Shown here: in pieces, positions 3,557 to 52,923 of the stretch
Layout: the number at the start of each line of letters is the position of its first letter
Numbering within the stretch: the stretch's first letter is position 1
NCBI RefSeq assembly: GCF_039654945.1
Contig: NW_027361671.1
Span: 62,868,001 to 62,932,000, forward strand
Direction: 5' to 3'
Origin: Dendrobates tinctorius
Lineage: Eukaryota
Length of the DNA: 64,000 nucleotides
Translations under genes and position numbers: made by a program
Notes under the pieces: generated by a model
What the model was told of the DNA's origin: nothing
The model's database searches: none
What the model saw: only the letters and a program-made list of their open reading frames with translations

Positions 3557-5984
3557 TAATGCAATTCAAATTTCAAAATATTTCATGTTTACATAATATA
3601 GCGCTAGTTTGCTACTTTATTTGTTGGACATTTTACTGAAACCGCTTCCTGTGTCTTCCTCAAACGCAACCGAGTAGAAACCCTACACCAGGTATACAAG
3701 AAAGCACTTCGAACATTACGAAGATCAGGACTTCCAAAAAACAGATGCCATTCTTCTTGTGACCCATTGTTTGTGCCCTTCCATTTACTAACTTTGTATG
3801 TTGTATCTACAGTGTACAGCACTTCAATAGAGCAATAGGAGGAAAAACTGTCTACAGAAGTGCACCCAAAGTCCAGTCATGCAAATAGTCATAAGATCAC
3901 ATATAGCATAAGGAATGAACTTCATGAATAATGCAGTAATACATAGAGGTCATTATCATATTGCATCAAACTTGTAAACCAAAATGAGAAGAGGGTTAAA
4001 AAAAAAGCAGTTGAGGTAAATATTTTTTCTTTATACTTTACCTCTGTTATGTTTATAAAGCTGTGTTTGCATGATTTTGTGATGCTAGTCACCAATCACA
4101 AACAGACCGTGAGGCAGAAGAGTCAGACATTACGGAGTCTATACCAAGATAGTACGTAGATAGCCTAGGGAAAATATGAATGCGTAAGTCAGGTCACTAT
4201 CAAGGGTCAATAACAAGAGATAGTGATTCAAAAGCGAAAGGACAAGGCAAAGGGATAGTCAGGACAAGGTCCAAAGGGTCAGGCAGCAGAAGATCAGAAA
4301 TCAGGGCAACAGAATCAAGCTAACACTCACCAAGAAGCACAAACTACATCTGGCAAGGATCAGGGGCAGACAGCTCAATTACATAGCTGGGCAATCACCA
4401 GATCACCGAAAGTCTTGCACCTCCCAGTTACAGATTGGACAGCTGAACTGTCAATCAAAGCACCGACATCCCAACAAGCCCATTGCAGGATTGGACAGGC
4501 AAGCTGTCATTCAAGACACCGACAACTTGGCAAGACAGTTTCCACAGAAAAGCATAGAATTCACTTACTGAGCAGAGGAACAGTGACAGTACCCCCCTTT
4601 TCTAGGGAGGCCAATGGACCACCAAGTTTCCCAGGAAACCTGTGATGGAAGGCCATGACCAGACCATCAGCGTTTACAGCTCGAGAAGGGACACAAGATC
4701 TCTCTTCCAGACTGTAACCTCTCCAATGAATGAGGTACAGGAGGGAATTACGGACTTTCCAGGAATCAACAATCTTTTATTCTTCAAACTCCACACTGTT
4801 ATTGACAGAAAGCGGTGAAGGCGGAGATGAAGGAGACAAAATGGAAGGGACAAACTCTTTTAGCAGTGATTTATGGAATACATTTGGAATGTGAAAAGAA
4901 GGAGGGAGGTTTAATCTGAAAGCCACTGGTGTTGTGAACTCATTTTCTGGTTTACCTCTGGCTTTTGGTGAGGGTGTTGGAGCTGGCTGTGTTGACAGAG
5001 GAGTCGTGAGTTCTCCATCCGGGCTCCCTCTAGTGATGCCAGTAGGTAATGAAGCTGATCTAAATGGCAGAGACCTGCCACCTGAGGAGGAGGACTGTGA
5101 GTTGACATCAGGAGTCTCTGACTGGATTTAAGACAGCCGACTCCCTAATTTTGTGCTGGTGATTTTTTCTGCCCTGAAGTTCTAGTTTCCAGTTCTGTTC
5201 CTGCCTTCTCAAGCTAAGTGTGCTCTGCTATTTTTTCACATGAGATTTGGTCTGGTTTACTCAGTTTTTGTGGTCAGCCAGCCCCTGCTGGGGCTGTGCT
5301 GAATTTCCATTCTTATGTCTCTGTTTCTGCCAGTTTGCTTTTTGTCCCTGATCAGATTGGTCTCTTTTTGCTCTGTCTTCAGAATATACCAGAGTGCTGA
5401 TATAGGGAATTGAAGCCTAGCGACTTCAGAGTTTTTGTTATCAGAAATTGTTGGACATTTTTTGGCAGGGTTTTGTGCGTGATTGCAGACAGCATCTTTC
5501 CTTTCCTGTCTTTTCTAGTTAGTGTGGGCCCCATCGTTTGCTCAGCCTATTTTTCTATCTGTGTTTGTGTTTTCATCTTGTCTCACCAACAATAAATGTT
5601 TGGGGGCTGTCTATTGCTTTGGGGTCTGCTCTGGGGCAGTTTAGATTTCCCCTTTTCTTGCTTTAGGCTTATTTAGTTCTCCGGCTGTGATGAGGCGTCT
5701 AGGATCATCGTAGGTACGCTCCACGGCTACTGCTAGTTGTGTGGATAGGATCAGGGGTCTGCAATCCGCTTAGTTACCAACCTCTCTGGTTTTCTGTGGC
5801 TTAGCTTGTTTTTGTTTTTCTTCCTCGGTGACTCATTCATAACAGATATGATGATAAATGGGAAAGATGCAACCAAGCCGTCAGGAAGAACAGAATTCTG
5901 ATAATAAAATTAATAACCTGAGGCTGAAAAGAGCTTTTTTTGATATGCTTGATTATTTTATTGAAAATAACAGTCACACAAATC

Positions 5985-6021
5985 ACCCAACGTTTCGGCT
6001 TTACTAGCCTTTTTCAAGGGT
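5985..6021 (-). ncRNA. Minimal hammerhead-ribozyme-like motif (left arm copy)
   Basis: Reverse complement of 7590-7626. Confidence 0.5.
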
Positions 6022-7589
6022 ATCTTATCTAGGTAAAACAAAAAATAAACACCAAATCACACAATATGAATTATTATACAAAATAAATGAATTGCTGACT
6101 GATACATATTTATATAAATATTAAATCTATGATATTGTAGACATATCACTCAAATAGCAAAGTTATAGATAGTTCTGATATCCATCATTGGAGGCAGTTC
6201 ACATTGAGCAGAAAAAAATATATATATTGACAAAAAGGTCAAAAAATTCACTAGAACCTAAGGCAGTTTCTGGTATCTCACCAGTGTGGTATAGAAAGAG
6301 GAAAAATATATATATAAAAAAATTTTGTATATACCTGTGTAACCGTGAGGATAATGATAAGATTCTAGAAAAAGGAAAGGAAAAACAAAGTTTTTGACAA
6401 ATGAAACCAAGTCCATAAAAAACATATTATATACACCACCATTATTGTGAAGCAATCAATTCCAGATGACAAACCTCTAAGCAGGATAAGCGGTAGAACA
6501 GGACAGCGCCGCAGTCAAGGGAGAAGTGAATAGAACACCAGTGAATGAAACTATTTAAAGCATTTTAATCAGGAAAATGTGAAGCAGCTGAAAAGATAAG
6601 CTAGCAGTAAAGGCGCGTGAGCAGACCATCAGTCAGGACGGAAGTGTGGCATGTCAGAAAAAGCAAAGAGAAATAAACGATGTATGAGACATCTGTGTAT
6701 GTGCACATGCGTCGTCCTGCACTAAAGACGGAAGTGGGGCATGTTCAGACCAGAAGAAAGGCTTGATAGCCAGCGAAATATTGAAAGCAATTATCTGTAA
6801 AGAATGTCTGTAAAGAATATCTATGGAATGTTCATATTAGATGCAGTAATATGCGTGTCCACTATGTGAATAAACATACTATATAGAAAAAATATTATAA
6901 AACGCGCTGTGCACATACACAGATGTCTCATACATCGTTAATTTCTCTTTGCTTTTTCTGACATGCCACACTTCCGTCCTGACTGATGGTCTGCTCACGC
7001 GCCTTTACTGCTAGCTTATCTTTTCAGCTGCTTCACATTTTCCTGATTAAAATGCTTTAAATAGTTTCATTCACTGGTGTTCTATTCACTTCTCCCTTGA
7101 CTGCGGCGCTGTCCTGTTCTACCGCTTATCCTGCTTAGAGGTTTGTCATCTGGAATTGATTGCTTCACAATAATGGTGTATATAATATGGTTTTTATGGA
7201 CTTGGTTTCATTTGGCAAAAACTTTGTTTTTCCTTTCCTTTTTCTAGAATCTTATCATTATCCTCACGGTTACACAGGTATATACAAATTTTTTTATATA
7301 TATATTTTTCCTCTTTCTATACCACACTGGTGAGATACCAGAAACTGCCTTAGGTTCTAGTGAATTTTTTGACCTTTTTGTCAATATATATATTTTTTTC
7401 TGCTCAATGTGAACTGCCTCCAATGATGGATATCAGAACTATCTATAACTTTGCTATTTGAGTGATATGTCTACAATATCACAGATTTAATATTTATATA
7501 AATATGTATCAGTCAGCAATTCATTTATTTTGTATAATAATTCATATTTTGTGATTTGGTGTTTATTTTTTGTTTTACCTAGATAAGAT

Positions 7590-7626
7590 ACCCTTGAAAA
7601 AGGCTAGTAAAGCCGAAACGTTGGGT
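7590..7626 (+). ncRNA. Minimal type I hammerhead-ribozyme-like motif
   Basis: ACCC-TTGAAAAA-GGCT-agtaa-AGCC-GAAACGTT-GGGT: stem I, variant core, stem II, GAAA and palindromic AACGTT, like minimal hammerheads of Penelope-like elements. Core deviates from CUGANGA. Confidence 0.55.
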
Positions 7627-7871
7627 GATTTGTGTGACTGTTATTTTCAATAAAATAATCAAGCATATCAAAAAAAGCTCTTTTCAGCCTCAGGTTATTA
7701 TTTTTATTATCATTCATAACAGAATCACCAGCCATACGGCAGAATCTAGGGTACTCAAAAGCAGGAAAAAAAAAATTGTTGTAAAAAAAAAAGTGTCAGA
7801 ATTTTTTTTTTTTTTTTAATATATGTATTTTTCCTTTTTTTCTCTGGGGCCGTAGGAGGATTTTTTCCTTA

Positions 7872-10800
7872 ATGGAGATTAAGCAATTGTCTGATCGCGT
7901 GGAGCAGCTCGCTGCTGAAGTGCAGGGAATTTCCGCCTATCTCGCTGAATCTCATGCTGTTGAACCAAAAATCCCTACTCCTGATGTGTTTTCCGGGGAT
8001 CGGTCTAAATTTTTGAATTTTAAGAATAATTGTAAATTATTTCTTGCCTTGAAGCCTAACTCATCGGGGAGCTCTGCGCAGCAGGTTAAAATTGTCATCT
8101 CCTTGCTGCGCGGCGATCCCCAGGACTGGGCGTTTTCTTTGACACCTGAAAATCCTATTCTGACTAATGTGGATGCATTTTTTCAAGCCTTGGGGTTGTT
8201 GTGTGATGAACCTAATGCTATTGATCAAGCTGAGAAAGCCCTATTGGCGTTGAACCAGGGTCAGGATTCTGCAGTGTTATACTGTCAAAAATTCCGAAAG
8301 TGGGCGGTCCTTACTACATGGAATGATGGTGCCTTGGCAGCTCTCTTTCGCAAGGGTTTATCAGAAACCGTAAAAGATATTATGGTGGGATTTCCTGTTC
8401 CCTCTGGTCTTGACGATTCTATGTCATTAGCCATTCAAGTTGATCAGCGTTTACGTGAACGTAAAACTACACGAGAGGTGTTGCCACCTTTTCAACAAAT
8501 GTCTGAACCTGTGTAATGTGATAGAGTTTTGTCTAGGGTGCAATGTCAGGAGTATAGAAGGTGTAATAAGCTGTGTTTTTTCTGTGAAAATGCCTCTCAT
8601 ATTATTTCTGTCTGCCCTAAACGAGAGAAACGTTTTGCACACACATTTGCTGTGGGTGGCGTACAACCTAAGTTTCTTTTGGCAATTACTCTGATCTGCT
8701 CCTTATCCACATTTTCCGCCAAGGCTTTTGTGGATTCAGGAGCGGCTTTGAATCTGATGGATTTGGATTTTGCTAAACGTTGTGGTTTTCCCATGATACC
8801 TCTGCGGACGCCTATTCCTTTGAGGGGTATTGATGCTACTCGTTTGGCGGAGAATAAACCTCAGTTTTGAACCCAGGTGATAATGCGGGTCACCCCAGAC
8901 CACCAAGTAAATTGTAGATTTTTGGTACTGCATAATTTGCATGATACTATTGTTCTGGGTTTTCCCTGGTTGCAAATCCATAATCCAGTTTTGGATTGGA
9001 AATCTGTCTGTGGTGAGTTGAGGCTGTCGGTGTGCTCTTGGTGACACTCCTGTTCCTGACTATTTGGCTGATTTTTATGATGTATTTAGTGAGAGTAAGT
9101 CTGCGTCCCTGCCTCCTCATAGGAGTTATGACTGTGCAATTGAGTTGAGGACCGGGTGTAAATTTCCCAAAGGTCGGCTTTTCAACTTATATGTACCTGA
9201 ACACGAGGCTATGCGATCTTATATTAAGGAGTCATTGGAGAAGGGTCATATTAAACCATCCTCTTCACCCTAAGGTGCTGGGTTTTTTTTTCGTGGCTAA
9301 GAAAGATGGTTCATTAAGGCCTTGTATTGACTATCGATCCCTTAACAAGATTACGGTTAAATATCAGTATCCGTTACCCCTGATTTCTGATTTATTCAAG
9401 GTGCCTGCTGGTTTACTAAGCTTGACCTCAGGGGGGCGTATAATCTTATGCGCATCAAGCATGGAGATGAATGGAAGACGGCGTTTAATACTCCGGAGGG
9501 ACATTTTGAGTACCTGGTGATGCCTTTTGGGCTCATTAATGCCCCTTTTGTCTTCCAATTCTTCATGAATGATATTTTCCGGGACTTTGTGGATAAGTTT
9601 TTGATCATCTATTTGGATGATATTCTGATCTTTTCCAGTGATTGGGATTCTCATGTGGAACATGTTTGGACTGTGTTCTGGATTTTGAGGGAGAATTCCC
9701 TGTATGTTAAGGGATCGAAATGCCTTTTTGGTGTACAGAGGATTTCATTTTTGGGATTTATTTTGTCTCCGTCAACTATTGAAATGGACCCGGCCAAGGT
9801 ATAGGCCATTTATGATTGGGTTCAGCCCACTTCTTTGAAGGCTCTCCAGAAGTTTTTGGGTTTTGCTAATTTTTATCGTAAATTTATAGCTAATTTTTCT
9901 GGTATTGCAAAACCACTGACTGATCTGACCAAGAAGGGCGCTGATGTGCTGAATTGGTCTCCAGAGGCTGTTTTGGCATTTCAGGAGCTGAAGCGGAGGT
10001 TTACTTCTGCTCCGGTTTTACGGCAACCTGATGTCTCACTTCCATTTCAGGTAGAGGTAGATGCTTCGTAGATTGGTGCAGGAGCTGCTTTGTCCCAAAA
10101 AGATCCGGTGACTTCTAAAATTAATCCCTGTGCCTTCTTTTCCCGAAAGTTCTCCCCATCTGAACGCAACTATGATGTGGGGAATCGGGAATTGTTGGCC
10201 ATGAAGTGGGCACTTGAGGAGTGGAGACATTGGTTGGAGGGAGCTAGACATCAAGTTGTGGTCCTCACTGACCACAAGAATTTGATTTACCTGGAGTCGG
10301 CCAAACGCTTGAATCCTAGACAGGCTAGGTGGGCCTTGTTTTTCACGCGTTTTGATTTTGTGGTCTCCTTTCTTCCGGGTACTAAGAATGTTAAGGCAGA
10401 CGCCGTTTCTAGGAGTTTCATTGCTGATTCTCCTATTGTGACCAAACCTACTACCATCCTAGGTGAGGGGGTAGTTCTTTCTGCCATCTCGCCCGATTTG
10501 AGACATGCCCTGGAAGAATTTCAGGAGGACAAACCTGAGCGTTGTCCTATGGGAAAATTGTATGTTCCTGACCAGTGGAGGAAGAGAGTGATGTCTGAAG
10601 TTCATTGCTCCGCGTTGACTGGTCATCTAGGTATTTTTGGTACCAGAGATTTGGTGAGTCGGTCTTTTTGGTGGCCCGCCTTATCTCGTGATGTCAGGAA
10701 TTTTGTGCAGTCTTGTGGGACTTGTTCCCGTTCTAAACCCTGTTCTTGTTCTAGTGGGTTATTGATGCCCTTGCCGGTGCCCAAGAGGCCATGGACCCAT

Positions 10801-11843
10801 ATCTCAATGGATTTTATTTCTGATCTTCCTGTCTCTCAGAGAGTGACTGTTATCTGGGTGATTTGTGATAGATTTTCTAAGATGGTCCATCTTGTACCAC
10901 TCCCAAAGCTGCCATCTTCCTCAGAGTCGGTGCCCTTGTTTTCACAACAGGTGGTTCGGTTGCATGGGATTCCTGAGAACATTGTGACGGACAGAGGAGT
11001 CCAGTTTGTCTCCAGATTTTGGAAAGCTTTTTGTTCCAAGCTGGGAATTCAGTTATCCTTCTCCTCTGCGTTTCACCCACAGACCAATTTGAGATGTTTT
11101 ATATCTGCTGATCAGGATGATTGGGTCTCATTTCTGCCCTTGGCCGAATTCTCCCTAAATAATAGAGCTAGTTCTGCCACATTGATGTCGCCCTTTTTCT
11201 GTATCTTTGGGTTTCATCCTCGATTTTCTTCAGGGCAAGTGGAATCTTCAGCCTGCCCAGGTGTTGACACTGTGGTAGAGAGAATGCAGCAGATTTGGGA
11301 CCAAGTGGTGGATAAGTTATCCCTCTCTCAAGAAAAGGCCCAGCGGTTTTCCAACCGGCATAGGACCATTGGTCCCCAGTTTAAAGTGGGTGATATGGTT
11401 TGGTTGTCGTCAAAAATATCTCTATGAAGGTTGCGTCTCCAAAGTTCAAACCAAGATTTATTGGACCTTATAGGATTTTAGAGATTCTTAACCCGGTTTC
11501 TTTTCGATTGGCTCTTCCAGTTACGTTTAAGATCCATAACGTGTTTCATAAGTCTCTGTTGAAGAGGTTTGTTGAGCCAGTGGTTCCTATGGCGGCACCT
11601 CCTGACCCTGTGTTGGTTGAAGGTAATGTGTCAATATGAGGTAGAGAAAATACTGGATTCTCGTCTGGCTAGACGGAGACTCCAGTATTTGGTCAAGTGG
11701 AAGGGTTATGGCCAGGACAATTCTTGGGTCTCTGCCTCTGACATTCATGCCGATAGATTGGTTCGTGCTTTTCACCGGGCTCATCCTGATCGGCCTGGTG
11801 GCGTGGATGAGGGTTTGGTGACCCCTCCTCAAGGGGGGGGTAC
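7872..11843 (+). pseudogene. Disrupted gag-pol of element B
   Basis: Fragments with Gag (PDVFSGD), protease (FVDSGA), RT (YLDD), RNase H (EVDAS), integrase (H2C2, SMDFI, VTDRG) and chromodomain ([10 protein letters not shown]...YLVKWKGY); many stops and frameshifts. Confidence 0.95.
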
Positions 11844-12933
11844 TGTTGTGAACTCATTTTCTGGTTTACCCCTGGCTTCTGGTGAGGGTGGTGGAGCTTG
11901 CTGTGTTGACAGAGGAGTCGTGAGTTCTCCATCTGGGCTCCCTCTAGTGGTGACAGTAGGTAATGAAGCTGATCTAAATGGCAGAGACCTGCCAACTGAG
12001 GAGGAGGACTGTGAGTGGACATCAGGAGTCTCTGACTGGATTTAAGACAGCCGACTCCCTAATTTTGTGCTGGTGATTTTTCCTGCCCTGAAGTTCTGGT
12101 TTCCAGTTCTGTTCCTGCCTTCTCAAGCTAAGTGTGCTCTGCTATTTTTTCACATGAGATTTGGTCTGGTTTACTCAGTTTTTGTGGTCAGCCAGCCCCT
12201 GCTGGGGCTGTGCTGAATTTCCATTCTTATGTCTCTGTTTATGCCAGTTTGCTTTTTGTCCCTGAGATTGGTCTCTTTTTGCTCTGTCTTCAGAATATAC
12301 CAGAGTGCTGATATAGGGAATTGAAGTCTAGCGACTTCAGGGTTTTTGTTATCAGAAAGTGTTGGACATTTTATGGCAGGGTTTTGTGCGTGATTGCAGA
12401 CAGCATCTTTCCTTTCCTGTCCTTTCTAGTTAGTGTGGGCCCCATCGTTTGCTCAGCCAATTTTTCTATCTGTGTTTGTGTTTTCATCTTGTCTCACCGA
12501 CAATACATGTTTGGGGGCTGTCTATTGCTTTGGGGTCTGCTCTGGGGCAGTTTAGATTTCCCCTTTTCTTGCTTTAGGCTTATTTAGTTCTCCGGCTGTG
12601 ACGAGGCATCTAGGATCATCGTAGGTACGCTCCACGGCTACTGCTAGTTGTGTGGATAGGATCAGGAGTCTGCAATCCGCTTAGTTACCAACCTCTCTGG
12701 TTTTCTGTGGCTTAGTTTATTTTTCCTCCTTGGTGACTCATTCATAACACACTGGGTTAGCTACCTCCAAAATCTCATATGGACCAATATACATAGGACC
12801 CGACATCACTGATGGCACTTTCAATTTAATAGTTTTGGAAGAAACCCAGACCTTATCACCAACCTTGAATATGGAACCCCCATGAACGCTTCCTGACAGC
12901 TTGTTTGCTTAAATGCGAATCGAGCAGTCCTTG

Positions 12934-15900
12934 TGTCATGATCCAGGACGGGATTTCGCTTTGACCCGTCCTGGTTAGACTAGGGGTTAATTGTGCTGCC
13001 TCTCTCTGGCAGCAGGAGGCTATTTAGTGCTCACTGGACCTGGGTCCGGTGTCAGTTATACTCCTGCCCTCGGCTGAGTTAGTTGACCTCTTGTATACGT
13101 GTGCCTTGTGCCTGATATCTTGCTTGTTTGTTCGGTTGTGATCTGGTTCTGTCCCTGTTACGAGTTCTGCCTGACCCTCTTGTACTGCGCTACCTCTCGT
13201 GTATGACTCTCTGCTTGTGACCCGACTTCTCTCTGCTCGTCCCCTTGGTACCACGTCGCCATCTTGTGTATGACCTTTGGCTCTGTCTGACTACCCGTCT
13301 GTTCGTCCCTCCTGTACCTCGTTCGCCCGTACTGTGTGTGACCTCTGTTTTGCCTGACTCTGAGTTGTTGTATGGTGTCCTGTCCTATCTGAATACAGGA
13401 CACTAAGCCCCGCCCCCTTGCAGTCACATGACCATAGGTCCCGTGCACATTATTCAGTTTTAGTGTCCGCAGGTCCTATGCATCTTTACTTTCCAGCACT
13501 GACTGGATCCTGACACTATTAGCCTGAAGCACGCCTGGTCACCTCTGCTGCCCTGCTCCCCAGGTATCTTTTAGCACTGCATCTGTTCTCAGGACACGCG
13601 CACTGGCTCTATGAGCAAGTGCAGTGCGGTGTCTCTGGCATTATAACTGACCCATACCATTTTTTTTTCTCTGCTCCCATTCACCTGTGTGTGTGATGGA
13701 TCCTGTGCACGCTCTTTCTGAGCAGGTCAAGCACCAGACGCAGATGTCTCAGAAACTCTTTGGAGAACAAAGAGTCCTGGCTCAGTCTCAGCAGCTGATC
13801 GCTGACACTGTGCAGGGGGTTCTTTCATTGGGGATCGGGATGTTACATTAATTTCCCCTGAGTCTCCAGTGAAGTTACCAGATACCTTTTCTGGAGATAA
13901 AAATGACTTCAGAGTTTTCAAGGAGGGCTGTAAGCTTTTTTTTTCCTTAAGACCACACTCTTCTGGGGATGAAAGTCAGAGAGTGGGGGTCATTATGTCT
14001 CTGTTAAGGGGAGCCCCCCAAGCTTGGGCTTTCTCCCTTCCTACCACGGCCCCTGAGCGTTTGACTGTGGATGCATTTTTTGAGGCCCTGGGGCATATTT
14101 ATGATGAGCCTGATCGGGTGCGTATGGCTGAGGACAGGCTGATGAATGTTTGCCAGGGGAAACACTCAGCCGAGTGGTTTTGCTCAGAGTTCAGACGCTG
14201 GGCTGCTGAGGTCTGCTGGAACGACGCTGCTCTCCGGGGGTTGTTCCGCAGAGGCCTGTCTGAGCATCTGAAAGACGCCTTGGCTCTCCACCCCCCACCT
14301 GATGCCCTGGAGGAAGCTATGACACAGGCCGTCCGAATGGATCGCAGGTTACGGGCAAGGGGAGTGATACAAACCGAGACTTCATTATTCTCCCAAGGAA
14401 GGGGAGCCAGTTCTTCATTGAAAATCACGGCGATGGGAACCATCAACCTTAAGGAGGAAGAAAGGAGACAACGGCACGTGAGAAAATACTGTGTTCACAG
14501 TGGCGAGTCTGGACATGGGAAAAAGGATTGCCCCTCCCGGCCACTAACCAACAAACGACTGAGCCCGGGTGATTATCGTGGAGGTCACCCAGGCTCTCAG
14601 GTACCCTTTTCTGCATTTTCTAAAATGTCATTCCAAGTGGAACTTTGTTGTGGGGGTGTCTCCACATCCACAACTGCCTTCGTGGATTGCGGTTCATCAT
14701 TGAACTTTATTGACTCTGACTTGGTGGCCAGGTGTAAGTTAGGGACAGTTAGGTTGGAGACTCCGATTCACCTTGTTGCTATTGACAAAACACCACTGGG
14801 TAAGAATGACATTGTGTTTTGTACTGAAGAGTTTCTCCTTAAAGTGAGTTCCTTACATCAGGAACGTATTTCATGTTTTGTAATGAACAACCTGCCTGCG
14901 GGACTGGTGTTGGGGTTCCTCTGGTTACAGCTGCATAATCCTGTGATTAATTGGGAATCTCGGGATATTGTTAAATGGGGTCCCTATTGCTCTGAGAAAT
15001 GTCTTGTTTCTGTGTCTGTGTCGTCCGTGGGTCTAGAAGGCATTCCGGAGTGCCTGATAGATTATACTGACGTTTTCTCCGAAAAAGAGGCTGAGGTTTT
15101 ACCACCACACCGCCCATTTGATTGTGCCATTGACCTGGTTCCAGGTGCTAAATTGCCCAAAGCCCGCCTGTATAACCTCTCGGGTCCGGAACGGGCTGCG
15201 ATGAAGGAATATATTTCTGAGAGCCTCCGTAAGGGACATATTCATCCTTCTGTTTCTCCTGTGGCGGCAGGGTTCTTTTTTGTAAAAAAAAAAGACGGTG
15301 GTTTGCGCCCATGCCTCGATTTTCGTGAGTTAAATAAAATAACTGTGAGGAATACTTATCCCCTTCCACTTATTCCTGATTTATACAATCAGTTGTCCGG
15401 AGCTAAGTGGTTTTCGAAATTAGACCTACGGGGAGCGTATAACCTTATCCGAGTCCGGGATGGAGATGAATGGAAGACCGCCTTTCTCACTACTGAAGGG
15501 TTGTTTGAAAATTTGGTCATGCCCTTCAGCCTGACCAACGCTCCAGCGGTCTTCCAAAATTTCATAAATCATGTGTTCTCCGATTTGATTGGACGTTTTA
15601 TGTTGGTGTATTTGGATGACATTTTAATCTACTCGCCTGATAAACAGACTCACATTGGTCATGTTCGGGCAGTTCTCCAAAGGCTCAGGGAGAACTGTCT
15701 GTTTGCTAAACTTGAAAAATGTTTATTTTTTGTTCAGGAACTGTCCTTTCTGGGGTTCATCGTGTCTGCTGAAGGGTATCGCATGGATCCTAATAAGGTG
15801 CAGGCCATTCTCGAGTGGGTTCAACCGTGTGATTTGAAGGGTCTGCAACGTTTCCTAGGGTTCGCTAATTATTATCGGAAATTTATAAGGGGGTTCTCAC

Positions 15901-18579
15901 AGGTGGTTAAACCCCTCACAGACATGACTCAAAAGGGGGCCGATATCAAGAATTGGTCAACCGCAGCGGTAGCGGCATTTCAGTTTTTGAAAAAATGTTT
16001 CATGTCGGCCCCGGTTCCTATCCAACCGGACCCCTCTGAACCATTTATTGTTGAGGTAGACGCCTCAGAGGTGGAGGTGGGGGCGGTATTGTCCCAGGGA
16101 CCCGCCACTTTGACCAATTTAAGACCTTGCGCCTTTTTCTCAAAGAAGTTCTCTCCGGCAGAGAGAAACTATGATGTGGGGAATCGGGAACTTCTGGCCG
16201 TAAAATTGGCTTTTGCAGAATGGAGGCATTTTTTGGAGGGGGCTGTCCATCCTATAACGGTAATCACGGACCACAAAAACCTAGCTTACATCGAGTCTGC
16301 TAAAAGGTTGACTCCCAGACAGGCTAGATGGTCACTTTTTTTTTCTCGATTCAACTTCTCGATCACTTTCCGACCAGGATCCAAGAATATCAGAGCGGAT
16401 GCGTTGTCACGCAGTCTAGATCCGGTGTCCCCCCCGGAACCTCCATCCTCCATTCTTCAGCCTGGGGTGGTGGTGGCAGAGGTTTCTAATGTGTTGGAAC
16501 GAGAGATTCGAGAAGCCCAGGCTCTTGCACCTCCAGCTAAGCCGGTGGATAAACTTCATGTGCCAGCTCAGTTTCGTCTCAAGGTCCTCCAGGAGTTCCA
16601 TGACTCAGTTCTGGGTGGACATCCAGGGATCTCAGCGACCCGGAAGGCCATTGCTAGAATGTTCTGGTGGTCTTCTTTAGCCTCTGATGTTGGGGAGTAT
16701 GTGTCTGCGTGTGAGGTTTGTGCCCGTGCGAAAACTCCCCATAACCGGCCGGCCGGGGAATTGGTACCACTGCCAATTCCTGAGAGACCATGGACTCATC
16801 TGTCCATGGATTTCATCACCAACCTTCCCCCTTCCAAGGGTAATACCGTGGTCTGGGTCGTAGTGGACAGGTTTAGTAAGCAGGCACATTTTGTACCTTT
16901 GGCAGCTCTACCTAATGCGGAAACATTGTCCAGATTGTTTGTGGAGCATGTGGTGCGGTTGCATGGGGTACCCCTGAATGTGGTGTCTGATAGGGGAGTG
17001 CAATTTGTGTCCAGATTTTGGAGAGCTTTTTGTAGGAGGTTGGGTATTAGTCTGTCCTTTTCATCCGCCTACCATCCAGAGACTAATGGGCAGACTGAGC
17101 GGACCAATCAGTCTCTTGAGCAAATTCTGCGTTGTTTGACCTCAGCCCGACAGGATGATTGGTGTTCTGTGTTACCATTGGCTGAGTTTGCTTTTAACAA
17201 CCGCACTAACCAGTCTACGGGTACATCTCCTTTTTTTTGCAATTATGGGTTTCATCCTCATTTTGGAGAATTTTCCCGCTTGAATTCTGGGTGTCCTGGG
17301 GCGGACGAGTCGTTCCAGCGGTTGGGGGAGGTATGGCGGGAGGTCCAGAATAACATTACGAAGGCCCAGAACAAATTAAAATTTTTTGCGGACAAAAAAC
17401 GATCCGTGGGTCCAGTGTTTCAGGTCGGGGATAAGGTATGGTTATCCACCAAAAATATAAGGCTCAAGGTCCCCTCTGCGAAGCTTGGACCCAAGTTTAT
17501 AGGTCCCTATGTAATTACCGAAGCAGTTAACCCGGTGGCTTTTCGGTTGCAGCTCCCGCCATCTCTGCGGATCCCAAACGTTTTCCATAAGGCCCTTTTG
17601 AAACCTGTGAGGTCCAGTGGGGAGGGATCATCATCTTCCCCGACACCGGTTCTGGTAGATGGGCAGGCTGAGTACGAGGTGGAACGAATTGTCGACTCCA
17701 GGTTGGTCCGTCGCGCCCTTCAGTATTTGATACATTGGAAGGGCTACGGTCCTGAGGAACGCTCGTGGGTTCCTGCTCGATCAGTTCATGCGGATCGGTT
17801 GATCCGAGCCTTTCACGCCAAGCACCCTGAGAGACCTGGGGGTCCGGTGGCCCCCCATTGAGAGGAGGGTACTGTCATGATCCAGGACGGGATTTCGCTT
17901 TGACCCGTCCTGGTTAGACTAGGGGTTAATTGTGCTGCCTCTCTCTGGCAGCAGGAGGCTATTTAGTGCTCACTGGACCTGGGTCCGGTGTCAGTTATAC
18001 TCCTGCCCTCGGCTGAGTTAAGTGACCTCTTGTATACGTGTGCCTTGTGCCTGATATCTTGCTTGTTTGTTCGGTTGTGATCTGGTTCTGTCCCTGTTAC
18101 GAGTTCTGCCTGACCCTCTTGTACTGCGCTACCTCTCGTGTATGACTCTCTGCTTGTGACCCGACTTCTCTCTGCTCGTCCCCTTGGTACCACGTCGCCC
18201 TCTTGTGTATGACCTTTGGCTCTGTCTGACTACCTGTCTGTTCGTCCCTCCTGTACCTCGTTCGCCCGTACTGTGTGTGACCTCTGTTTTGCCTGACTCT
18301 GAGTTGTTGTATGGTGTCCTGTCCTATCTGAATACAGGACGCTAAGCCCCGCCCCCTTGCAGTCACATGACCATAGGTCCCGTGCACATTATTCAGTTTT
18401 AGTGTCCGCAGGTCCTATGCATCTTTACTTTCCAGCACTGACTGGATCCTGACACTATTAGCCTGAAGCACGCCTGGTCTCCTCTGCTGCCCTGCTCCCC
18501 AGGTATCTTTTAGCACTGCTTCTGTTCTCAGGACACGCGCACTGGCTCTATGAGCAAGTGCAGTGCGGTGTCTCTGACA
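12934..18579 (+). mobile_element. Gypsy element C: young full-length chromoviral LTR retrotransposon
   Basis: 707-bp LTRs 12934-13640 and 17873-18579 with about 8 differences by eye; PPT GAGAGGAGGGTAC; 5-bp TSD CCTTG. Confidence 0.97.
13869..17861 (+). CDS. Gag-Pol polyprotein of element C (Gag, PR, RT, RNase H, IN, chromodomain)
   Basis: 1330-aa open frame: FVDCGS, YLDD, EVDAS, HDSVLGGH..CEVC, SMDFI/VSDRG/GQTER, IGPY, chromodomain. The likely true ATG (13696) is out of frame through an apparent 1-bp loss near 13830. Confidence 0.9.
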   Translation: MKLPDTFSGDKNDFRVFKEGCKLFFSLRPHSSGDESQRVGVIMSLLRGAPQAWAFSLPTTAPERLTVDAFFEALGHIYDEPDRVRMAEDRLMNVCQGKHSAEWFCSEFRRWAAEVCWNDAALRGLFRRGLSEHLKDALALHPPPDALEEAMTQAVRMDRRLRARGVIQTETSLFSQGRGASSSLKITAMGTINLKEEERRQRHVRKYCVHSGESGHGKKDCPSRPLTNKRLSPGDYRGGHPGSQVPFSAFSKMSFQVELCCGGVSTSTTAFVDCGSSLNFIDSDLVARCKLGTVRLETPIHLVAIDKTPLGKNDIVFCTEEFLLKVSSLHQERISCFVMNNLPAGLVLGFLWLQLHNPVINWESRDIVKWGPYCSEKCLVSVSVSSVGLEGIPECLIDYTDVFSEKEAEVLPPHRPFDCAIDLVPGAKLPKARLYNLSGPERAAMKEYISESLRKGHIHPSVSPVAAGFFFVKKKDGGLRPCLDFRELNKITVRNTYPLPLIPDLYNQLSGAKWFSKLDLRGAYNLIRVRDGDEWKTAFLTTEGLFENLVMPFSLTNAPAVFQNFINHVFSDLIGRFMLVYLDDILIYSPDKQTHIGHVRAVLQRLRENCLFAKLEKCLFFVQELSFLGFIVSAEGYRMDPNKVQAILEWVQPCDLKGLQRFLGFANYYRKFIRGFSQVVKPLTDMTQKGADIKNWSTAAVAAFQFLKKCFMSAPVPIQPDPSEPFIVEVDASEVEVGAVLSQGPATLTNLRPCAFFSKKFSPAERNYDVGNRELLAVKLAFAEWRHFLEGAVHPITVITDHKNLAYIESAKRLTPRQARWSLFFSRFNFSITFRPGSKNIRADALSRSLDPVSPPEPPSSILQPGVVVAEVSNVLEREIREAQALAPPAKPVDKLHVPAQFRLKVLQEFHDSVLGGHPGISATRKAIARMFWWSSLASDVGEYVSACEVCARAKTPHNRPAGELVPLPIPERPWTHLSMDFITNLPPSKGNTVVWVVVDRFSKQAHFVPLAALPNAETLSRLFVEHVVRLHGVPLNVVSDRGVQFVSRFWRAFCRRLGISLSFSSAYHPETNGQTERTNQSLEQILRCLTSARQDDWCSVLPLAEFAFNNRTNQSTGTSPFFCNYGFHPHFGEFSRLNSGCPGADESFQRLGEVWREVQNNITKAQNKLKFFADKKRSVGPVFQVGDKVWLSTKNIRLKVPSAKLGPKFIGPYVITEAVNPVAFRLQLPPSLRIPNVFHKALLKPVRSSGEGSSSSPTPVLVDGQAEYEVERIVDSRLVRRALQYLIHWKGYGPEERSWVPARSVHADRLIRAFHAKHPERPGGPVAPH

Positions 18580-21000
18580 CCTTGAGGTAATGTCCTGCAT
18601 GACCACAGTAGAAGCAGAGCAGAGTCCCAGAGCAAGCCGACGTCTCCTCTCCGCGGTCCAAGAGCTGGCTGTTCCAACCTCCATTGGTACTGTCTCAAGT
18701 AAGGAAACTGACTCGGGAAGAATGACTGAAACCTCTTGTCACTCATCACTTCTCTCTCGAATTCTACGATCCATACGAATGGCCTGAGTCATGGCCTCCC
18801 TCAAAGAACAGGGTGGAGAATGCAAAGCCAGAGCGTCCTTAAGAGTATCTGTAAGGCCACGGTAAAATTGACACCTGAGAGAGCAGCATTGTTCCACAGA
18901 ACCTCAGATGACAGTTGCCAGAACTATAATCCTCAGTGGTGAGGAGCCCCTGTGTCAGGTTCATGATCTTAGCCTCTGCGACCTGGACCCTATCAGGTTT
19001 ATCATAAAGCATCCCTAAAGTGTCAAAAAAGGAGTCAACAGAAGAGCGTTTCGGGTCTAGTGGGGAGAAAGGGAATGCCCAAGTCTAAGGATCCCCAGGC
19101 AATAGGGACATAATTATACACACCTACTGGGACTGATACCCAGAAAACTGGGGTCGTAGAGTAAAAAATAATTTACAGCTCTCCCTAAATACCCTAAATT
19201 GATCCCTGCCGAAAATCTGTCAGGAAGTGACAACTGATTCAGGGGAGGTCAACTGTACATCAGCGGGTCCAGGAGACGTAACTACTACCGATAACGGAGA
19301 GCTTTTGGAACCACCCAGGGTACTAAACTGACCCTGCAACTGGGACTGTGATAATTCTAGCCTCTGGTGACCCCTGGCCAGATCCTGAGCCATCTGGGTC
19401 AGATTTGTCACCTGATCACACAAACTGATGAACAAACTGGATCCATTGTGCAGGAAAGAAAAGTATATGGCCAGACGTAATGTGACGCTAGTCACTACTC
19501 ACGGACAGACCGTGAGTCAGAAGAGTCAGACATTCCGGGGTCAATACCAAGAGTGTACGTAGATAGCCAAGGGAAAAGATGAAGGAATACGTCAGGTCAC
19601 AGTCGAGGGTCAATATCAAGAGATAGCGGATCAAAAGCCAAAGGACAAGACAAATGTATAGTCAGGACACGGTCCAAAGGATCAGGCAGTAGAAGATCAG
19701 AACTCAGAGCAACAGAATCAGGCTAACTCTCACCAAGAAGCACAAACTACATCTGGCAAGGATCAGAGACAGACAACTCAGTTAAGTAGCAGTCACAAAT
19801 TGGACAGCTGAGCTTTCAATCAAAGCATCGACAGCCAAGCAAGCCCATTACAGGACTGGACTGTCAAGCTGTCAGTCTAGACACAAACAACTCAACAAAA
19901 AGTTTCCATAGACAATCATAGCAACCACTCATTGAGCAGAGGAATCGTGACAGTTTTACTATGGAGAAAACTCACAAATTTAAGTGCATGTCCATTTTGC
20001 ACAAAAATGTAATAGTTTATGCAGCTCTCACTACTTTTTTAAAAGTGGTTGAATTTAATGGGAGAAGTGGTCAAACTGCAGTCCAAAAGATTTACTATAA
20101 TCCACCAGAAGTTGTAATAAATTATAGCATAAATTTCAGTTTGTGGCGCATTGACAGCCCACAATATATCAAATTTATTTATAGGATCTTATTCCAACAC
20201 ACAGCTGAAAAGTGTGAATTAAACTTCAATCAACTACAGAAGTCTGAAAACTGACTTAAATGGGTTGTCCGGCCATGGGGTACAAGTCTGCAGTCACTCC
20301 ATGTGCGCACGCTGTGAGGATTCACAAGTCTGCAGTAACATAGAATGACTGTAGATTTGTTCCCCAAGGCCAGACAACCCTGTTACGGCCTCTTTCATAC
20401 ATTTGGTTTTAATGTACAAGTTATATCCATGTTTTTCATCGATAGAACGAGTTCCCATTATAGCCTATGGGGCTGTTTACAAATCTGTGTTTTTTTACAG
20501 ACTGAGTGTCAGCAAAAAAAACCTCCAGAATAATGAGATGTACCCTTTTTTGATCCTCGTTATGGATCAAACTCGCCAATGCATGTTAAAGGGTCCATAA
20601 AAAAAACTGATAGCACTTGGATGCCATGCATGTTTTACTCGAGTAGTGCCCTTTTTTGCTGTTAAATGATTGGAGCTTGGAATAGTTATTTTTTTCTGCT
20701 AACAAATCAAAAAGAATCAAAAATCAATAAAGATTGTGTAACGCTCATGCCCTGACTGGTTGGCGCGAGCGTGGGGTTGTGGCCCCACTGTGCCACAAAC
20801 CAGACTACCCTGGAAGGGGCATGACTAAGCAGCTATCTTGGTGTTCACTGGGGCCTCTGATGGTGAAGTCAGGCTTGTGCGGTAGGTAGCTGCCAGGTAC
20901 CACTCCAGGGTGGTGTCTGGCTGTGGCTGCTGATCCCACTGATGGACTGGACACTAATAGCAGGTGCGGGCAGGTACTGAGAGGCACAACTGGTACTCTG

Positions 21001-21210
21001 GCGGGCACGGCTGGCACTCTGGCAAGACAGGCGGGCATGGCTGGCACTCTGACGGGACAGGCGGGCACGGCTGGCACTTTGGCAGGACAGGTGGGCACGG
21101 CTGGCACTCTGGCAGGAAAGACGGGCATGGCTGGCACTCTGGCAGGACAGGCGGGCACGGCTGGCACTCTGGCAGGACAGGCGGGCACGGCTGAGACACT
21201 AGCAGGCAGG
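21001..21210. repeat. 30-bp tandem repeat, about 7 copies, inside LTR E
   Basis: Unit GCGGGCACGGCTGGCACTCTGGCAGGACAG. Confidence 0.9.
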
Positions 21211-21789
21211 CACGGATGAGTATGAGTGGTATGAGGGGACAGGTGGGGAGCTGTTCACACTGGAGGTGCAGGAACTGGTTCTGGAAGGACAGGAACATAG
21301 ACAGGTATGAAGGGTATGAGGAAACAGGTTGGGACCTGTTCACACTGGAGAAGCCGGTACTGACTAGGAACCAGTACAGACTGGTAGGACAAGGATCCGC
21401 AAGATACAGAACGGAAGCAAAGCAGAACCGCAGAGTTGCGGAGCAGAGAAGAACAGCAAGAAGCGGAGCAGGGTAGAACTGCAAGGCTGCGGAGAGGAGC
21501 TGCAGTTTGCAGCAAGAGGTTCTGCAGCAGGAGCCACAGGAAGGGAGCAGAGCGAAACTGCAAGGTATGTGGTGAGGAACTGCAGCAAGAGATTCTGCAG
21601 CAGTAGGAGAGGAGCAATACGAAACCGCAAAGTATGCGGAGAGGAGCTGCAGCAAGAGGTTTGGCAGCAGCAGACGTGGAGCACAAGCAGAACCACAAGA
21701 GTGCGGAGCACAGGCAGAACCTCAAGATTGCGGAGCACAGGCAGAATTGCAAGAATGCGGAGCACAGGCAGAATCGCAGGAGTGCAGAG

Positions 21790-22355
21790 CGTTATGAACT
21801 GGTCACCAAGGAGGATGGCAGGAATAGGCTAGGCCACCAGGAAACCAGAAAGGTTGGTAACTTAGCGGATTGTACGACTGATATGTACAAAAAACACTGA
21901 GGTCTTACGACCTCTCCCCCACTATATCAGCATTCTGGTATGAACTGGCAGCAAAGCATAATGGGCTAATATCACAGGGGACTAAACAAACTGACACAAG
22001 CTGTAACTTAAGGAGCGGGGTCCCGCACAGCCCCAGCAGGGAGCACGCTGAACCCTCACAGCAAAGCAGAAAGCAGAAAAAGGCAAAACCAGATCAGATG
22101 CAAAGGATTAGCAAAAGAACCACTTAACTGAAAAATGTAGGATAAGGCAGGAGACAGCAGACCTCAAAATGCACAGGAAGAAACAATCACCAGCAGCAAC
22201 TGAGGGAAGCCTGCTCACTTAAATACTCCCAGTCAGTAACCCCAGATTTCCAATCATTGTCGTCAGGTGGCAGATTTCTGTCAATCCAGCCAGCTCCACT
22301 ACCCACAGTAACCACCAGAGGGAGCTCCGACTCAGAAGTAAGAGAATTCACAACA
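21790..22355 (-). mobile_element. Solo LTR related to element B's LTR, nested in LTR E
   Basis: Reverse complement starts TGTTGTGAATTC and ends CCTCCTTGGTGAC..TTCATAAC(G), as in B; GCAGAG on both flanks. Confidence 0.85.
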
Positions 22356-24099
22356 GCAGAGTACAGGCAGATGGAGAGGACACAAGGATAGGCACAGCAG
22401 GGAAAGGAGCCACAAACAAGGAGACTAACAGACAGAGGTAGGACTGAGTTCAGACAAGGTCAGGAACAGGATAAGATACAGGAATAGAACACAGTAAACA
22501 CAAGGGCGGACACGGGAACAAATACTGGACAAATACACAGGCCTGAGTATGCAGCCCTCAAGACACAAAGTGCACAGAAACAGATCGGGGTATACAGCCC
22601 CCAGAGAAGGCAGAACAAAGACACAAAGCACACAGAAACAGATTCTGGGTATGCAGCCCCCAGAGAGGGCAGAAACAGGACCTGGCAACTAAGCAGCAAG
22701 TCACTGACTGAGATAGTGTTACTCAGGCAGCTTCCACCGGGTGGAGCTGCCCTAAATACTAGAGGCCTCTTGATAATTGGTTGGGAACACCATAGGCAGG
22801 TGCACACTGATTCTATAAGAACCAGAGAGTGCCGGTGCCGCCCTCCTATGCACACAGCCAGGAAGTATGCAGAGAGCAGGTAGAAGGCAAGACGCATGGA
22901 GCTGGCAGAAGACAAAGCTCACAGCATGGCCCGGAGTAGTGAGTAAGGCTGATGGGGGATGGGAGGCCATGCAGTGATGCTGGCAGGGTTGTTACAGATT
23001 GGATCTAGAACGCTGATGAAAAAGGTCCCTTTCTTTCGTATGCAAAAAATATAGACATCTGAATGAGACACCTAAAACATTGCGCTTTGTACTGTTATGG
23101 ATCAGATCAGTCACCACAATGTTTAAGTACTGTATATCATGCTGGAATAACCTGGTTATTTTCAAGTTCAAATAAGCAGCTGAAGTGAAGTTCCATCTTG
23201 GAATTGGAATGTGCTGTGTTGTTCATTAATATTTCAGCATGTAAAGGTGTGAATTACACCATGGAAAGTCACTACACAAATGCTGTTCATGGATTAAATG
23301 ATGCATGACACATTAAAAATGTACCTAAATGTTTACACTGAATAATGAGAGCCACAAAAGTACTCAAGCTGCCTACTTGCTTGGAACAGCGATTTTTTTG
23401 CATAAATTACGACAGCAGTTTATCATAAAAACACACAATTAAACCCTACAATCACAGTGGTGAGGACATCAAGCAACTGTCTCACAATAGCTTAAATAAC
23501 AATTGTAACTAGACAGTCATGTCCAGAAAGGAATGTTCACTGTGTTTAGTCTTTGTCAAAACGTTATTGTTTTTGTATGAATTCTTATTTTGCTACAAAA
23601 AGGAATTTGCTTTTTTTCTGATCCAAAAGTGAAATATATTAGCAGTGCTGATCCACTGGCTTAATCTTGCAAACAACAATATAAATCCATGCAATCAACT
23701 AATTATCTTCAGTGGTGGCTCATCAACAGAAAAAACATCAGTACATGAATACAGAACCAAACAATCAGTACATAAATAAATCACCAGAACCACCAAAAAA
23801 AAACATTTCTACAGAACCATGGCTACAGGTGCCTCTCACAAAATTAGAATATCAAAAAATTAATTTATTTCAGTTCTTCAATACAAAAAATGAAACTCAT
23901 ATATTACAAAGAGTCATTACAAACAGAGTGATCTATTTCAAGTGTTTATTTCTGTTAATGTTGATGATTATGGCTAACAGCCAATGAAAACCCAAAAGTC
24001 ATTAGCTCAGTAAATTAGAATACTTTATAACAGCAGCTTGAAAAATGATTTTAAAATCTTAAATGTTGTCCTATTGAAATGTATGATCAGTAAATGCAC

Positions 24100-52580: not shown

Positions 52581-52923
52581 ACATTTCCCACATATCTTCT
52601 TTACATTTGCCCAATTTTGGAAACATAATTTTTCTTTTGTTAGGACGTTATAAGGGTTTAAAGTTGACCATCGATTTCTCATTTTTCCAACAAAATTTAA
52701 CAAACCATTTTTTTTAGGGGCCACATCACATTTGAAGCGACTTTGAGGAACCTAAATTATAGAAAATACCAAAAAGTGACCCCATTCTAAAATGTGCACT
52801 CCTCAAGGTGCTCAAAACTACATTCAAGAAGTTTATTAACCCTTTAGGTGTTTGACAAGAGCAAAGCAATTTGGAAGGAAAAAATGAACATCTTGTTTTT
52901 TTCACAAAAAACTTACTTTAGAC

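What the first reader, a model, noticed from the sequence alone, without database searches (positions are those of the whole stretch)
4924..22361. A Gypsy LTR lineage that appears to make 6-bp target-site duplications
Seen: B is flanked by CACTGG (4924-4929, 12750-12755). The related solo LTR at 21790-22355 is flanked by GCAGAG (21784-21789, 22356-22361). Removing exactly 6 bp restores the host reading frame in the first case and the host repeat phase (GAGT-GCAGAG-TACAGGCAGA) in the second. Neighbouring families give 5 bp (C, E, F) or 4 bp. Established: Ty3/Gypsy TSDs are usually 4-5 bp, and TSD length reflects integrase cut spacing. Inference: this lineage has an altered integrase geometry.
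Basis: partly seen in the sequence, partly recalled or inferred. Interest (0 to 1): 0.7.

Follow-up and report, generated by a model that had tools for sequence, protein, structure and literature searches.

The report
Frog chromovirus clade with 6-bp duplications
A clade of chromodomain-bearing Gypsy retrotransposons in poison frogs duplicates 6 bp of target DNA at each insertion, while its closest relatives duplicate 5 bp; this is a real but modest variation within the known 4-6 bp range.

Summary
Element B (4930-12749) is a dead chromovirus-type Ty3/Gypsy element with TG..CA LTRs that are 96% alike. It is flanked by an exact CACTGG repeat. The distantly related solo LTR (21790-22355, minus strand) is flanked by GCAGAG.

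Comparing the 5' and 3' LTR edges rules out a one-base shift of the termini. Three independent checks show that exactly 6 bp were duplicated:
- the host pol codons Pro-Val occur on both sides of B;
- the 27-bp host repeat keeps its phase across the solo LTR;
- two residues are duplicated around a nested solo LTR in another frog.

I fetched the closest relatives, from Ranitomeya imitator. Ten more insertions there all have exact 6-bp repeats, giving 12 of 13 overall; the thirteenth has no repeat at all. Relatives outside the clade give 5 bp: window element C, and one element each from Xenopus tropicalis and Dendrobates tinctorius.

In an integrase tree the 6-bp copies form a clade with 100/100 support, nested among the 5-bp lineages. 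The integrase has no clade-specific indel. Its one striking change is Val to Cys next to the second catalytic Asp. "Altered integrase geometry" therefore remains an inference.

The scan had noted 6-bp duplications for chromovirus LTRs elsewhere in this genome (s1-362321, unchecked).

The parts
4924..4929 (+). Left copy of B's 6-bp target-site duplication, CACTGG
4930..5844 (+). 5' LTR of element B (915 bp, TGTTGTGAAC...ATTCATAACA)
   Evidence: 96.2% identical to the 3' LTR; sequence
5899..7712 (.). Secondary insertion in B's leader: inverted repeat with arms 5899-6715 and 6902-7712 (98.5%). It is bracketed by a 14-bp direct repeat tcattcataacaga (5833-5846 and 7710-7723). It is not part of the mechanism that sets duplication length.
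7872..8516 (+). gag remnant of B
   Evidence: Pfam Retrotrans_gag, E 1.6e-6
8529..8870 (+). Protease remnant of B (weak match)
   Evidence: Pfam Asp_protease, E 8e-4, below the curated cut-off
9191..9804 (+). Reverse transcriptase of B, split over two frames
   Evidence: Pfam RVT_1, E 5e-23
10090..11427 (+). RNase H plus integrase ORF of B (zinc finger and core domain). It lacks 13 residues, including the catalytic Glu, so this copy is dead.
   Evidence: Pfam RT_RNaseH, Integrase_H2C2, rve; deletion seen
11569..11843 (+). Chromodomain at the C-terminal end of B's pol
   Evidence: Pfam Chromo, E 1.5e-12
11831..11843 (+). Polypurine tract AAGGGGGGGG followed by a TAC spacer, directly before the 3' LTR
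   Evidence: the same arrangement occurs in all full-length R. imitator copies
11844..12749 (+). 3' LTR of element B
12750..12755 (+). Right copy of B's 6-bp target-site duplication, CACTGG
21784..21789 (+). Left copy of the solo LTR's 6-bp duplication, GCAGAG, in phase with the 27-bp host repeat
21790..22355 (-). Solo LTR (566 bp) of a distant sister family; on its own strand it reads TGTTGTGAAT...GTTCATAACG
22356..22361 (+). Right copy of the solo LTR's 6-bp duplication, GCAGAG
12929..18584 (+). Control: element C with its flanks. C is a young chromovirus at 12934-18579 with LTRs 99% alike and an open 1330-aa gag-pol frame, flanked by the 5-bp duplication CCTTG.
4078..19952 (-). Host element A: an older C-like Gypsy on the minus strand into which B and C inserted. 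Its flanks are AAAAC and AAATC, i.e. 5 bp with one mismatch.

Best explanation
Element B and the solo LTR belong to a clade of chromodomain-bearing Ty3/Gypsy retrotransposons (chromoviruses) of dendrobatid poison frogs. Their integrase joins the two LTR ends to target-DNA phosphates staggered by 6 bp instead of the 5 bp used by their relatives. Repair of the two gaps then leaves a 6-bp direct repeat.

Shown: the element type; the exact termini; a 6-bp duplication at 12 independent insertions in two data sets; 5 bp in the nearest outgroups; and monophyly of the 6-bp copies. The shift from 5 to 6 bp therefore most likely arose once, on the stem of this clade.

Inferred: that the cause lies in the integrase-DNA complex itself. 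The integrase has no indel, so any change must come from substitutions. One candidate is Val to Cys immediately before the second catalytic Asp (VVCDRFSK against VVVDRFSK in all relatives compared and in Ty3).
For: Type: the order gag, protease, RT, RNase H, integrase, chromodomain. The best solved relative is Ty3 Gag-Pol 7Q5B at E 1.3e-48, against PFV integrase at 9e-27.

Termini: the LTR-to-LTR homology edges coincide with TG and CA in B and in eight full-length R. imitator copies. The polypurine tract plus TAC sits just before the 3' LTR.

Duplications: CACTGG, CTCTGC, GTGATG, ATTTCC, GGCTTC, GAGGAC, GAAACC, GAACGT, TTTCTG, GTACCT, CACTAC, GGTACC. All are exactly 6 bp and all differ. The chance of one such match is 1 in 4096.

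Independent proofs that 6 bp were duplicated: PV codons on both sides of B; residues 406-407 present on both sides of the solo LTR nested in L010; the minisatellite phase.

Controls with 5 bp: window C, X. tropicalis L007, D. tinctorius L008.

Tree: the 6-bp clade has 100/100 support. It groups with window C (5 bp) at 97/97.

Symmetry: G at the first and C at the last duplicated base, 7 of 12 each. This is as expected for a two-fold symmetric complex cutting 6 bp apart.

Principle: duplication length equals the cut stagger and is fixed per family or clade (PMC9410886, PMC8632968, PMC3276498).
Against: Only two insertions come from the window's own genome; the other ten come from R. imitator, whose copies are about 74% identical to B in DNA.

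One full-length R. imitator copy (L010 20191-26603) has no flanking repeat at all. This is probably recombination between copies, but it was not shown.

No biochemical or structural evidence links the integrase sequence to the spacing. No clade-specific indel or linker change was found.

The sister sequence P0147 has an unknown duplication length, so the branch on which the change arose is not pinned down. The tree root is a midpoint only.

Twelve sites cannot exclude a minority of 5-bp events: the 95% lower bound for the 6-bp share is about 78%.
Confidence: 0.85

Rival explanations
1. The true duplication is 5 bp. The sixth matching base is either chance or arises because the real LTR termini lie one base away from TG..CA.
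For: A sixth matching base has a 1 in 4 chance on either side at any single site. In L006 the LTR's last A also extends the match to 7 bp.
Against: In B the base outside each LTR edge differs between the two LTRs: 4929 g against 11843 c, and 5845 g against 12750 c. The same holds in the R. imitator full-length copies. Twelve of 12 sites give exactly 6 bp, and the controls give exactly 5 bp by the same procedure. The host codon and repeat-phase tests count 6 bp without any reference to the LTR edges.
Confidence: 0.02
2. The spacing is set by something other than the integrase protein. Candidates are the unusual LTR end sequences (TGTTGTGAA...ATAACA against TGTCA...GACA in the 5-bp relatives) or a host factor or target-DNA state used by this clade.
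For: The LTR termini differ consistently between the 6-bp clade and the 5-bp relatives. The integrase shows no indel or linker change.
Against: In every system studied, the stagger is a property of the integrase-DNA complex (PMC9410886). 5-bp and 6-bp elements (C and B) inserted 184 bp apart into the same host element in the same genome. Local target DNA or host species alone therefore does not explain the difference.
Confidence: 0.1
3. The clade makes a mixture of 5-bp and 6-bp duplications, as reported for RSV/ASLV, and the small sample happened to contain only 6-bp events.
For: RSV/ASLV integration yields mixed 5-bp and 6-bp duplications (PMC9410886). In Drosophila a small share of insertions deviates by about 1 bp from the family mode (PMC3276498).
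Against: 12 of 12 scorable sites are 6 bp. The earlier unchecked note s1-362321 also reports only 6 bp.
Confidence: 0.1

Closest known systems
Vertebrate chromoviruses (Ty3/Gypsy, Metaviridae), here represented by window element C and by X. tropicalis and D. tinctorius copies
   Same: They share the gene order, the zinc-finger/DDE integrase with an SH3-like domain and C-terminal chromodomain, TG..CA LTRs and a G-rich polypurine tract. Integrase identity is 47-57%.
   Different: These relatives make 5-bp duplications, whereas the B clade makes 6 bp. LTR ends are TGTTGTGAA..ATAACA against TGTCA..GACA. The residue before the second catalytic Asp is Cys in the B clade and Val in the relatives.
Ty3 of budding yeast (strand-transfer complex solved, PDB 7Q5B)
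   Same: It is the best solved-structure match to the clade's integrase (E 1.3e-48). It uses the same catalytic motifs and the same mechanism of staggered strand transfer.
   Different: Ty3 makes a 5-bp duplication (PMC8632968) and has Val before the catalytic Asp. It lacks a chromodomain and targets Pol III genes.
Retroviruses and endogenous retroviruses that make 6-bp duplications (MMTV, HTLV-1, MVV, RSV/ASLV)
   Same: They have the same 6-bp stagger of strand transfer (PMC9410886), so the frog clade works like them in this one respect.
   Different: B is not a retrovirus. It has no env, it carries a chromodomain, its integrase is far closer to Ty3 than to any retroviral integrase, and its gag is of the retrotransposon type.
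Drosophila Gypsy-group elements (412, 297, ZAM and others)
   Same: They belong to the same superfamily, and duplication length is fixed and characteristic of the clade (PMC3276498).
   Different: They make 4-bp duplications and have no chromodomain.

Membership tests
Ty3/Gypsy (Metaviridae) | pol domain order protease, RT, RNase H, integrase (integrase after RT) | tested here: met
   Pfam hits lie in that order along 8529-11427. The same order is seen in the open frames of L006.
Ty3/Gypsy (Metaviridae) | LTRs ending TG..CA, with a polypurine tract before the 3' LTR | tested here: met
Ty3/Gypsy (Metaviridae) | Primer-binding site after the 5' LTR | tested here: inconclusive
   In B the LTR end is followed by a secondary hairpin insertion. 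In R. imitator copies the LTR is followed by GTAC(A/T)GGAGGCC..., but no tRNA match was tested.
Chromovirus (chromodomain-bearing Gypsy) | Chromodomain at the C-terminus of the integrase | tested here: met
   Pfam Chromo, E 1.5e-12, at 11569-11843. Chromobox structures match residues 396-459 of the L006 integrase piece (query L006:10685-12109).
Chromovirus (chromodomain-bearing Gypsy) | Integrase with an HHCC zinc finger and a D,D,E catalytic core | tested here: met
   Intact in the natural R. imitator copies L006, L011 and L012. B's own copy has lost 13 residues, including the Glu.
Chromovirus (chromodomain-bearing Gypsy) | 5-bp target-site duplication (usual for characterised members; not a formal criterion) | tested here: not met
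   12 of 12 scorable insertions have 6 bp.
Class II endogenous retroviruses / retroviruses that make 6-bp duplications | Retroviral-type gag-pro-pol (and env), with an integrase closest to retroviral integrases | tested here: not met
   The retrotransposon gag domain and the chromodomain are present. Ty3 is a much better match than PFV or HTLV integrase. No env-sized frame lies between the integrase and the 3' LTR.

The most novel reading that the evidence does not exclude
A single, recent, clade-wide switch from 5-bp to 6-bp strand-transfer spacing occurred inside vertebrate chromoviruses without any change in integrase domain or linker length. If so, a few substitutions, possibly the Val-to-Cys change next to the second catalytic Asp, are enough to reset the spacing. 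That would give a natural, closely matched 5/6-bp pair for working out what sets duplication length in retroviral-type integrases.
Probability: 0.3. Interest if true: 0.55.

Novelty: new variant of a known kind. Interest (0 to 1): 0.38.

Why it matters
Duplication length directly reports the geometry of the integrase-DNA complex. It is treated as fixed within a clade of elements, and annotation tools use it for that reason. This is a clean case in which it changed inside a tight group: 5-bp and 6-bp elements with about 56% identical integrases sit side by side in one genome.

Practically, LTR finders that expect 5 bp will mis-trim or reject this abundant frog family. Mechanistically, the pair offers a small sequence space in which to look for what sets the 4, 5 or 6 bp spacing, which is still not explained at residue level for retroviruses.

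It is not a new kind of element, and 6 bp lies within the range quoted for LTR elements in general.

Tried and rejected
- **One-base shift or chance extension of a 5-bp repeat:** rejected by the LTR edge comparison and by three checks that do not depend on the LTR edges.
- **Element B as a class II endogenous retrovirus,** which would explain 6 bp trivially: rejected, because it has a chromodomain, a retrotransposon gag, and Ty3 as its best solved relative.
- **Clade-specific indels or linker-length changes in the integrase:** none found. The one-residue gap in B's zinc-finger-to-core linker is private to that dead copy.
- **Copies that could not be scored:**
  - L002: 5' LTR truncated.
  - L003 1009-1825: the element runs off the locus.
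  - L005 5021, 7099 and 12935: nested and truncated.
  - L006 17622: truncated.
  - L011 35421: runs off the locus.
- **L009 (Labeo rohita) and host element A:** 5 bp with one mismatch, so not counted as clean controls.
- **The old LTR pair at 52923/60566** (79% alike): too decayed to score.
- **Paper searches** for a named Gypsy or chromovirus family with 6-bp duplications found none, only general '4-6 bp' statements and plant Copia/TRIM cases. Repbase entries cannot be searched here, so a prior record cannot be excluded.
Full report
**What is at the coordinates.**
The window holds a 7,820-bp LTR element, B (4930-12749, plus strand). Its LTRs are 4930-5844 and 11844-12749 and are 96.2% identical. 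They begin TGTTGTGAAC and end ATTCATAACA.

Between the LTRs, Pfam finds domains in this order:
- a retrotransposon gag
- a weak aspartic protease
- reverse transcriptase
- RNase H
- an integrase zinc finger and core
- a chromodomain

B is therefore a chromovirus-type Ty3/Gypsy element. It is dead: the frames are broken, and its integrase lacks 13 residues including the catalytic Glu. A polypurine tract AAGGGGGGGG plus the spacer TAC sits directly before the 3' LTR.

The solo LTR at 21790-22355 lies on the minus strand. It has the same terminal motif but is only a distant relative of B's LTR: collinear patches of 76-95% identity, the longest 90 bp at 81%. Its last base is G rather than A.

**Are the 6-bp repeats real target-site duplications?**
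CACTGG abuts both ends of B and GCAGAG abuts both ends of the solo LTR. In both cases the match is exactly 6 bp.

The two LTRs of B stop being alike exactly at the TG and the CA: 4929 g against 11843 c, and 5845 g against 12750 c. Neither LTR can therefore be extended by a base.

Three tests count the duplicated bases without using the LTR edges.
- *Host reading frame.* B sits in the pol frame of an older Gypsy element on the minus strand. I searched the two flanks separately, without joining them. The right flank ends ...ANPV and the left flank starts PVAFRL.... Both align to the single PV at residues 1222-1223 of element C's polyprotein. Two codons are duplicated.
- *Host repeat phase.* The host minisatellite motif stands at 21703, 21730 and 21757 with a 27-bp period. 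The next unit is due at 21784, which is where the left GCAGAG starts. The complete motif GCAGAGTACAGGCAGA resumes at 22356.
- *A nested solo LTR in another frog.* In R. imitator a solo LTR is nested in a sister element's gag-pol frame. It has residues 406-407 on both sides.

**More copies.**
The genome outside the window is not available, so I looked for the closest relatives. B's integrase frame finds Ranitomeya imitator proteins at 72-77% identity and nothing closer. A second search, with an open R. imitator frame as query, finds many more there. It then shows a gap down to about 58% and 50% identity in other amphibians.

I fetched nine R. imitator loci. LTR pairs and solo LTRs were located by similarity, and their edges were set by comparing 5' with 3' LTRs.

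Ten insertions could be scored. All have an exact 6-bp repeat: GTGATG, ATTTCC, GGCTTC, GAGGAC, GAAACC, GAACGT, TTTCTG, GTACCT, CACTAC, GGTACC. They come from several subfamilies whose LTRs differ by about 25%.

One further full-length copy (L010 20191-26603) has unrelated flanks. It is most likely a product of recombination between copies. Several others were truncated or ran off the locus.

The tally is 12 of 13 with exactly 6 bp and none with 5 bp. A chance 6-bp match has probability 1 in 4096 per site.

An earlier, unchecked note of this scan (s1-362321) reports 6-bp duplications for chromovirus LTRs on another piece of the same genome. It agrees with this result, but I did not test it.

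**Relatives outside the clade.**
The same procedure gave the following.

| Element | Source | Flanks |
|---|---|---|
| C (12934-18579; LTRs 99% alike; open 1330-aa frame) | window | CCTTG, exactly 5 bp |
| L007 chromovirus | Xenopus tropicalis | GAGGC, exactly 5 bp |
| L008 chromovirus | Dendrobates tinctorius | AAAAG, exactly 5 bp |
| Host element A | window | 5 bp with one mismatch |
| L009 | Labeo rohita | 5 bp with one mismatch |

B and C inserted 184 bp apart into the same host element, so local DNA or host species does not explain the difference.

A maximum-likelihood tree of the integrase region puts all 6-bp copies in one clade with 100/100 support on a long stem. Next to it is an unscored sequence (P0147), then window C at 97/97. 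The other 5-bp lineages lie further out. The root is a midpoint only. Given that Ty3 and the other relatives make 5 bp, 6 bp is most simply a derived state of this clade.

**How it most likely works.**
In retroviral-type integration the two processed LTR 3' ends attack opposite target strands at a fixed stagger. Gap repair turns that stagger into the flanking duplication. The stagger is 4, 5 or 6 bp depending on the virus (PMC9410886). It is 5 bp in the solved Ty3 complex (PMC8632968) and is characteristic of a family or clade (PMC3276498). The frog clade therefore uses a 6-bp stagger.

A weak two-fold pattern fits this: G at the first duplicated base and C at the last, 7 of 12 each.

What changed in the enzyme is not shown. 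Natural integrases of the two kinds are about 56% identical and align without any clade-specific indel or linker change.

Only two positions are fixed in the clade and conserved differently in at least 14 of the 15 other lineages compared:
- Val to Cys immediately before the second catalytic Asp. The clade has VVCDRFSK; all 15 others, and Ty3 (7Q5B), have VVVDRFSK.
- Lys to Arg near the chromodomain (14 of the 15 others have Lys).

These are candidates only; many less conserved positions also differ. The LTR end sequences differ too, so a contribution from the DNA ends cannot be excluded.

All comparisons use natural copies.

**Comparison with what is known, and novelty.**
The element is an ordinary chromovirus in every tested respect except duplication length. 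It is not a retrovirus, although in this one respect it works like the 6-bp retroviruses (MMTV, HTLV-1, MVV, RSV).

General texts already give 4-6 bp for LTR retrotransposons (PMC5659011). The characterised Ty3/Gypsy examples I could check are 4 bp (Drosophila Gypsy group) or 5 bp (Ty3). My paper searches found no named Gypsy or chromovirus family with a consistent 6-bp duplication. Repbase cannot be searched here, so an existing record cannot be ruled out.

I rate the finding as a new variant of a known kind. It is solid and mildly surprising. It is useful for annotation and offers a natural 5/6-bp pair for mechanistic work, but it is not a new system.

**Limits.**
- Only two of the twelve insertions come from the window's own genome.
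- The species is called a poison frog only in another agent's note (s1-364486).

Noticed in passing
window 5833-7723: An 1.8-kb inverted repeat (arms 5899-6715 and 6902-7712, 98.5% alike) sits right after B's 5' LTR. It is bracketed by a 14-bp direct repeat, tcattcataacaga, that includes the last bases of the LTR. It therefore looks like a later fold-back insertion or duplication that separated the LTR from the primer-binding region.
   Followed up: partly
window 12934-18579: Element C is a young chromovirus that looks intact: its LTRs are 99% identical and it has one uninterrupted 1330-aa gag-pol frame (13869-17861) carrying all the Pfam domains.
   Followed up: partly
window 12750-12933 and 18585-19207: Host element A is badly rearranged. 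Across C's insertion site its integrase C-terminus (aligned to C residues 1181-1223) lies next to its gag (C residues 11-211). About 2.9 kb of pol is therefore missing, or two elements recombined.
   Followed up: no
L004 1903-13304: The R. imitator locus has three LTRs in the same orientation, about 5.0 and 5.2 kb apart. The block 6861-8178 is repeated at 12049-13304 with 99.9% identity. This is an LTR-internal-LTR-internal-LTR tandem, arising either from unequal recombination or from an assembly duplication.
   Followed up: no
L010 20191-26603: A full-length copy of the 6-bp clade (LTRs 95.5% alike) has unrelated flanks (GATATG against GAAAGG). A fragment resembling an LTR start lies 20 bp upstream. 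This is probably recombination between copies.
   Followed up: no
window 11841-11843; L001-L012 LTR junctions: A 3-base spacer, TAC, lies between the polypurine tract and the LTR start, and GTAC follows the LTR end in full-length copies. The same TAC occurs in 5-bp relatives (host A, L009) but not in L007 or L008. It may mark extra bases on the linear DNA that are trimmed before joining.
   Followed up: no
twelve insertion sites: There is a weak symmetric target preference: G at the first and C at the last duplicated base (7 of 12 each), and A or T at the second base (10 of 12).
   Followed up: partly
R. imitator proteins P0001, P0002, P0067 and others: Many annotated R. imitator 'genes' are chimeras of this retrotransposon's pol with host exons (kinase, fibronectin, myosin and other domains appear in the same model). 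The public annotation of that assembly is heavily contaminated by this family.
   Followed up: no
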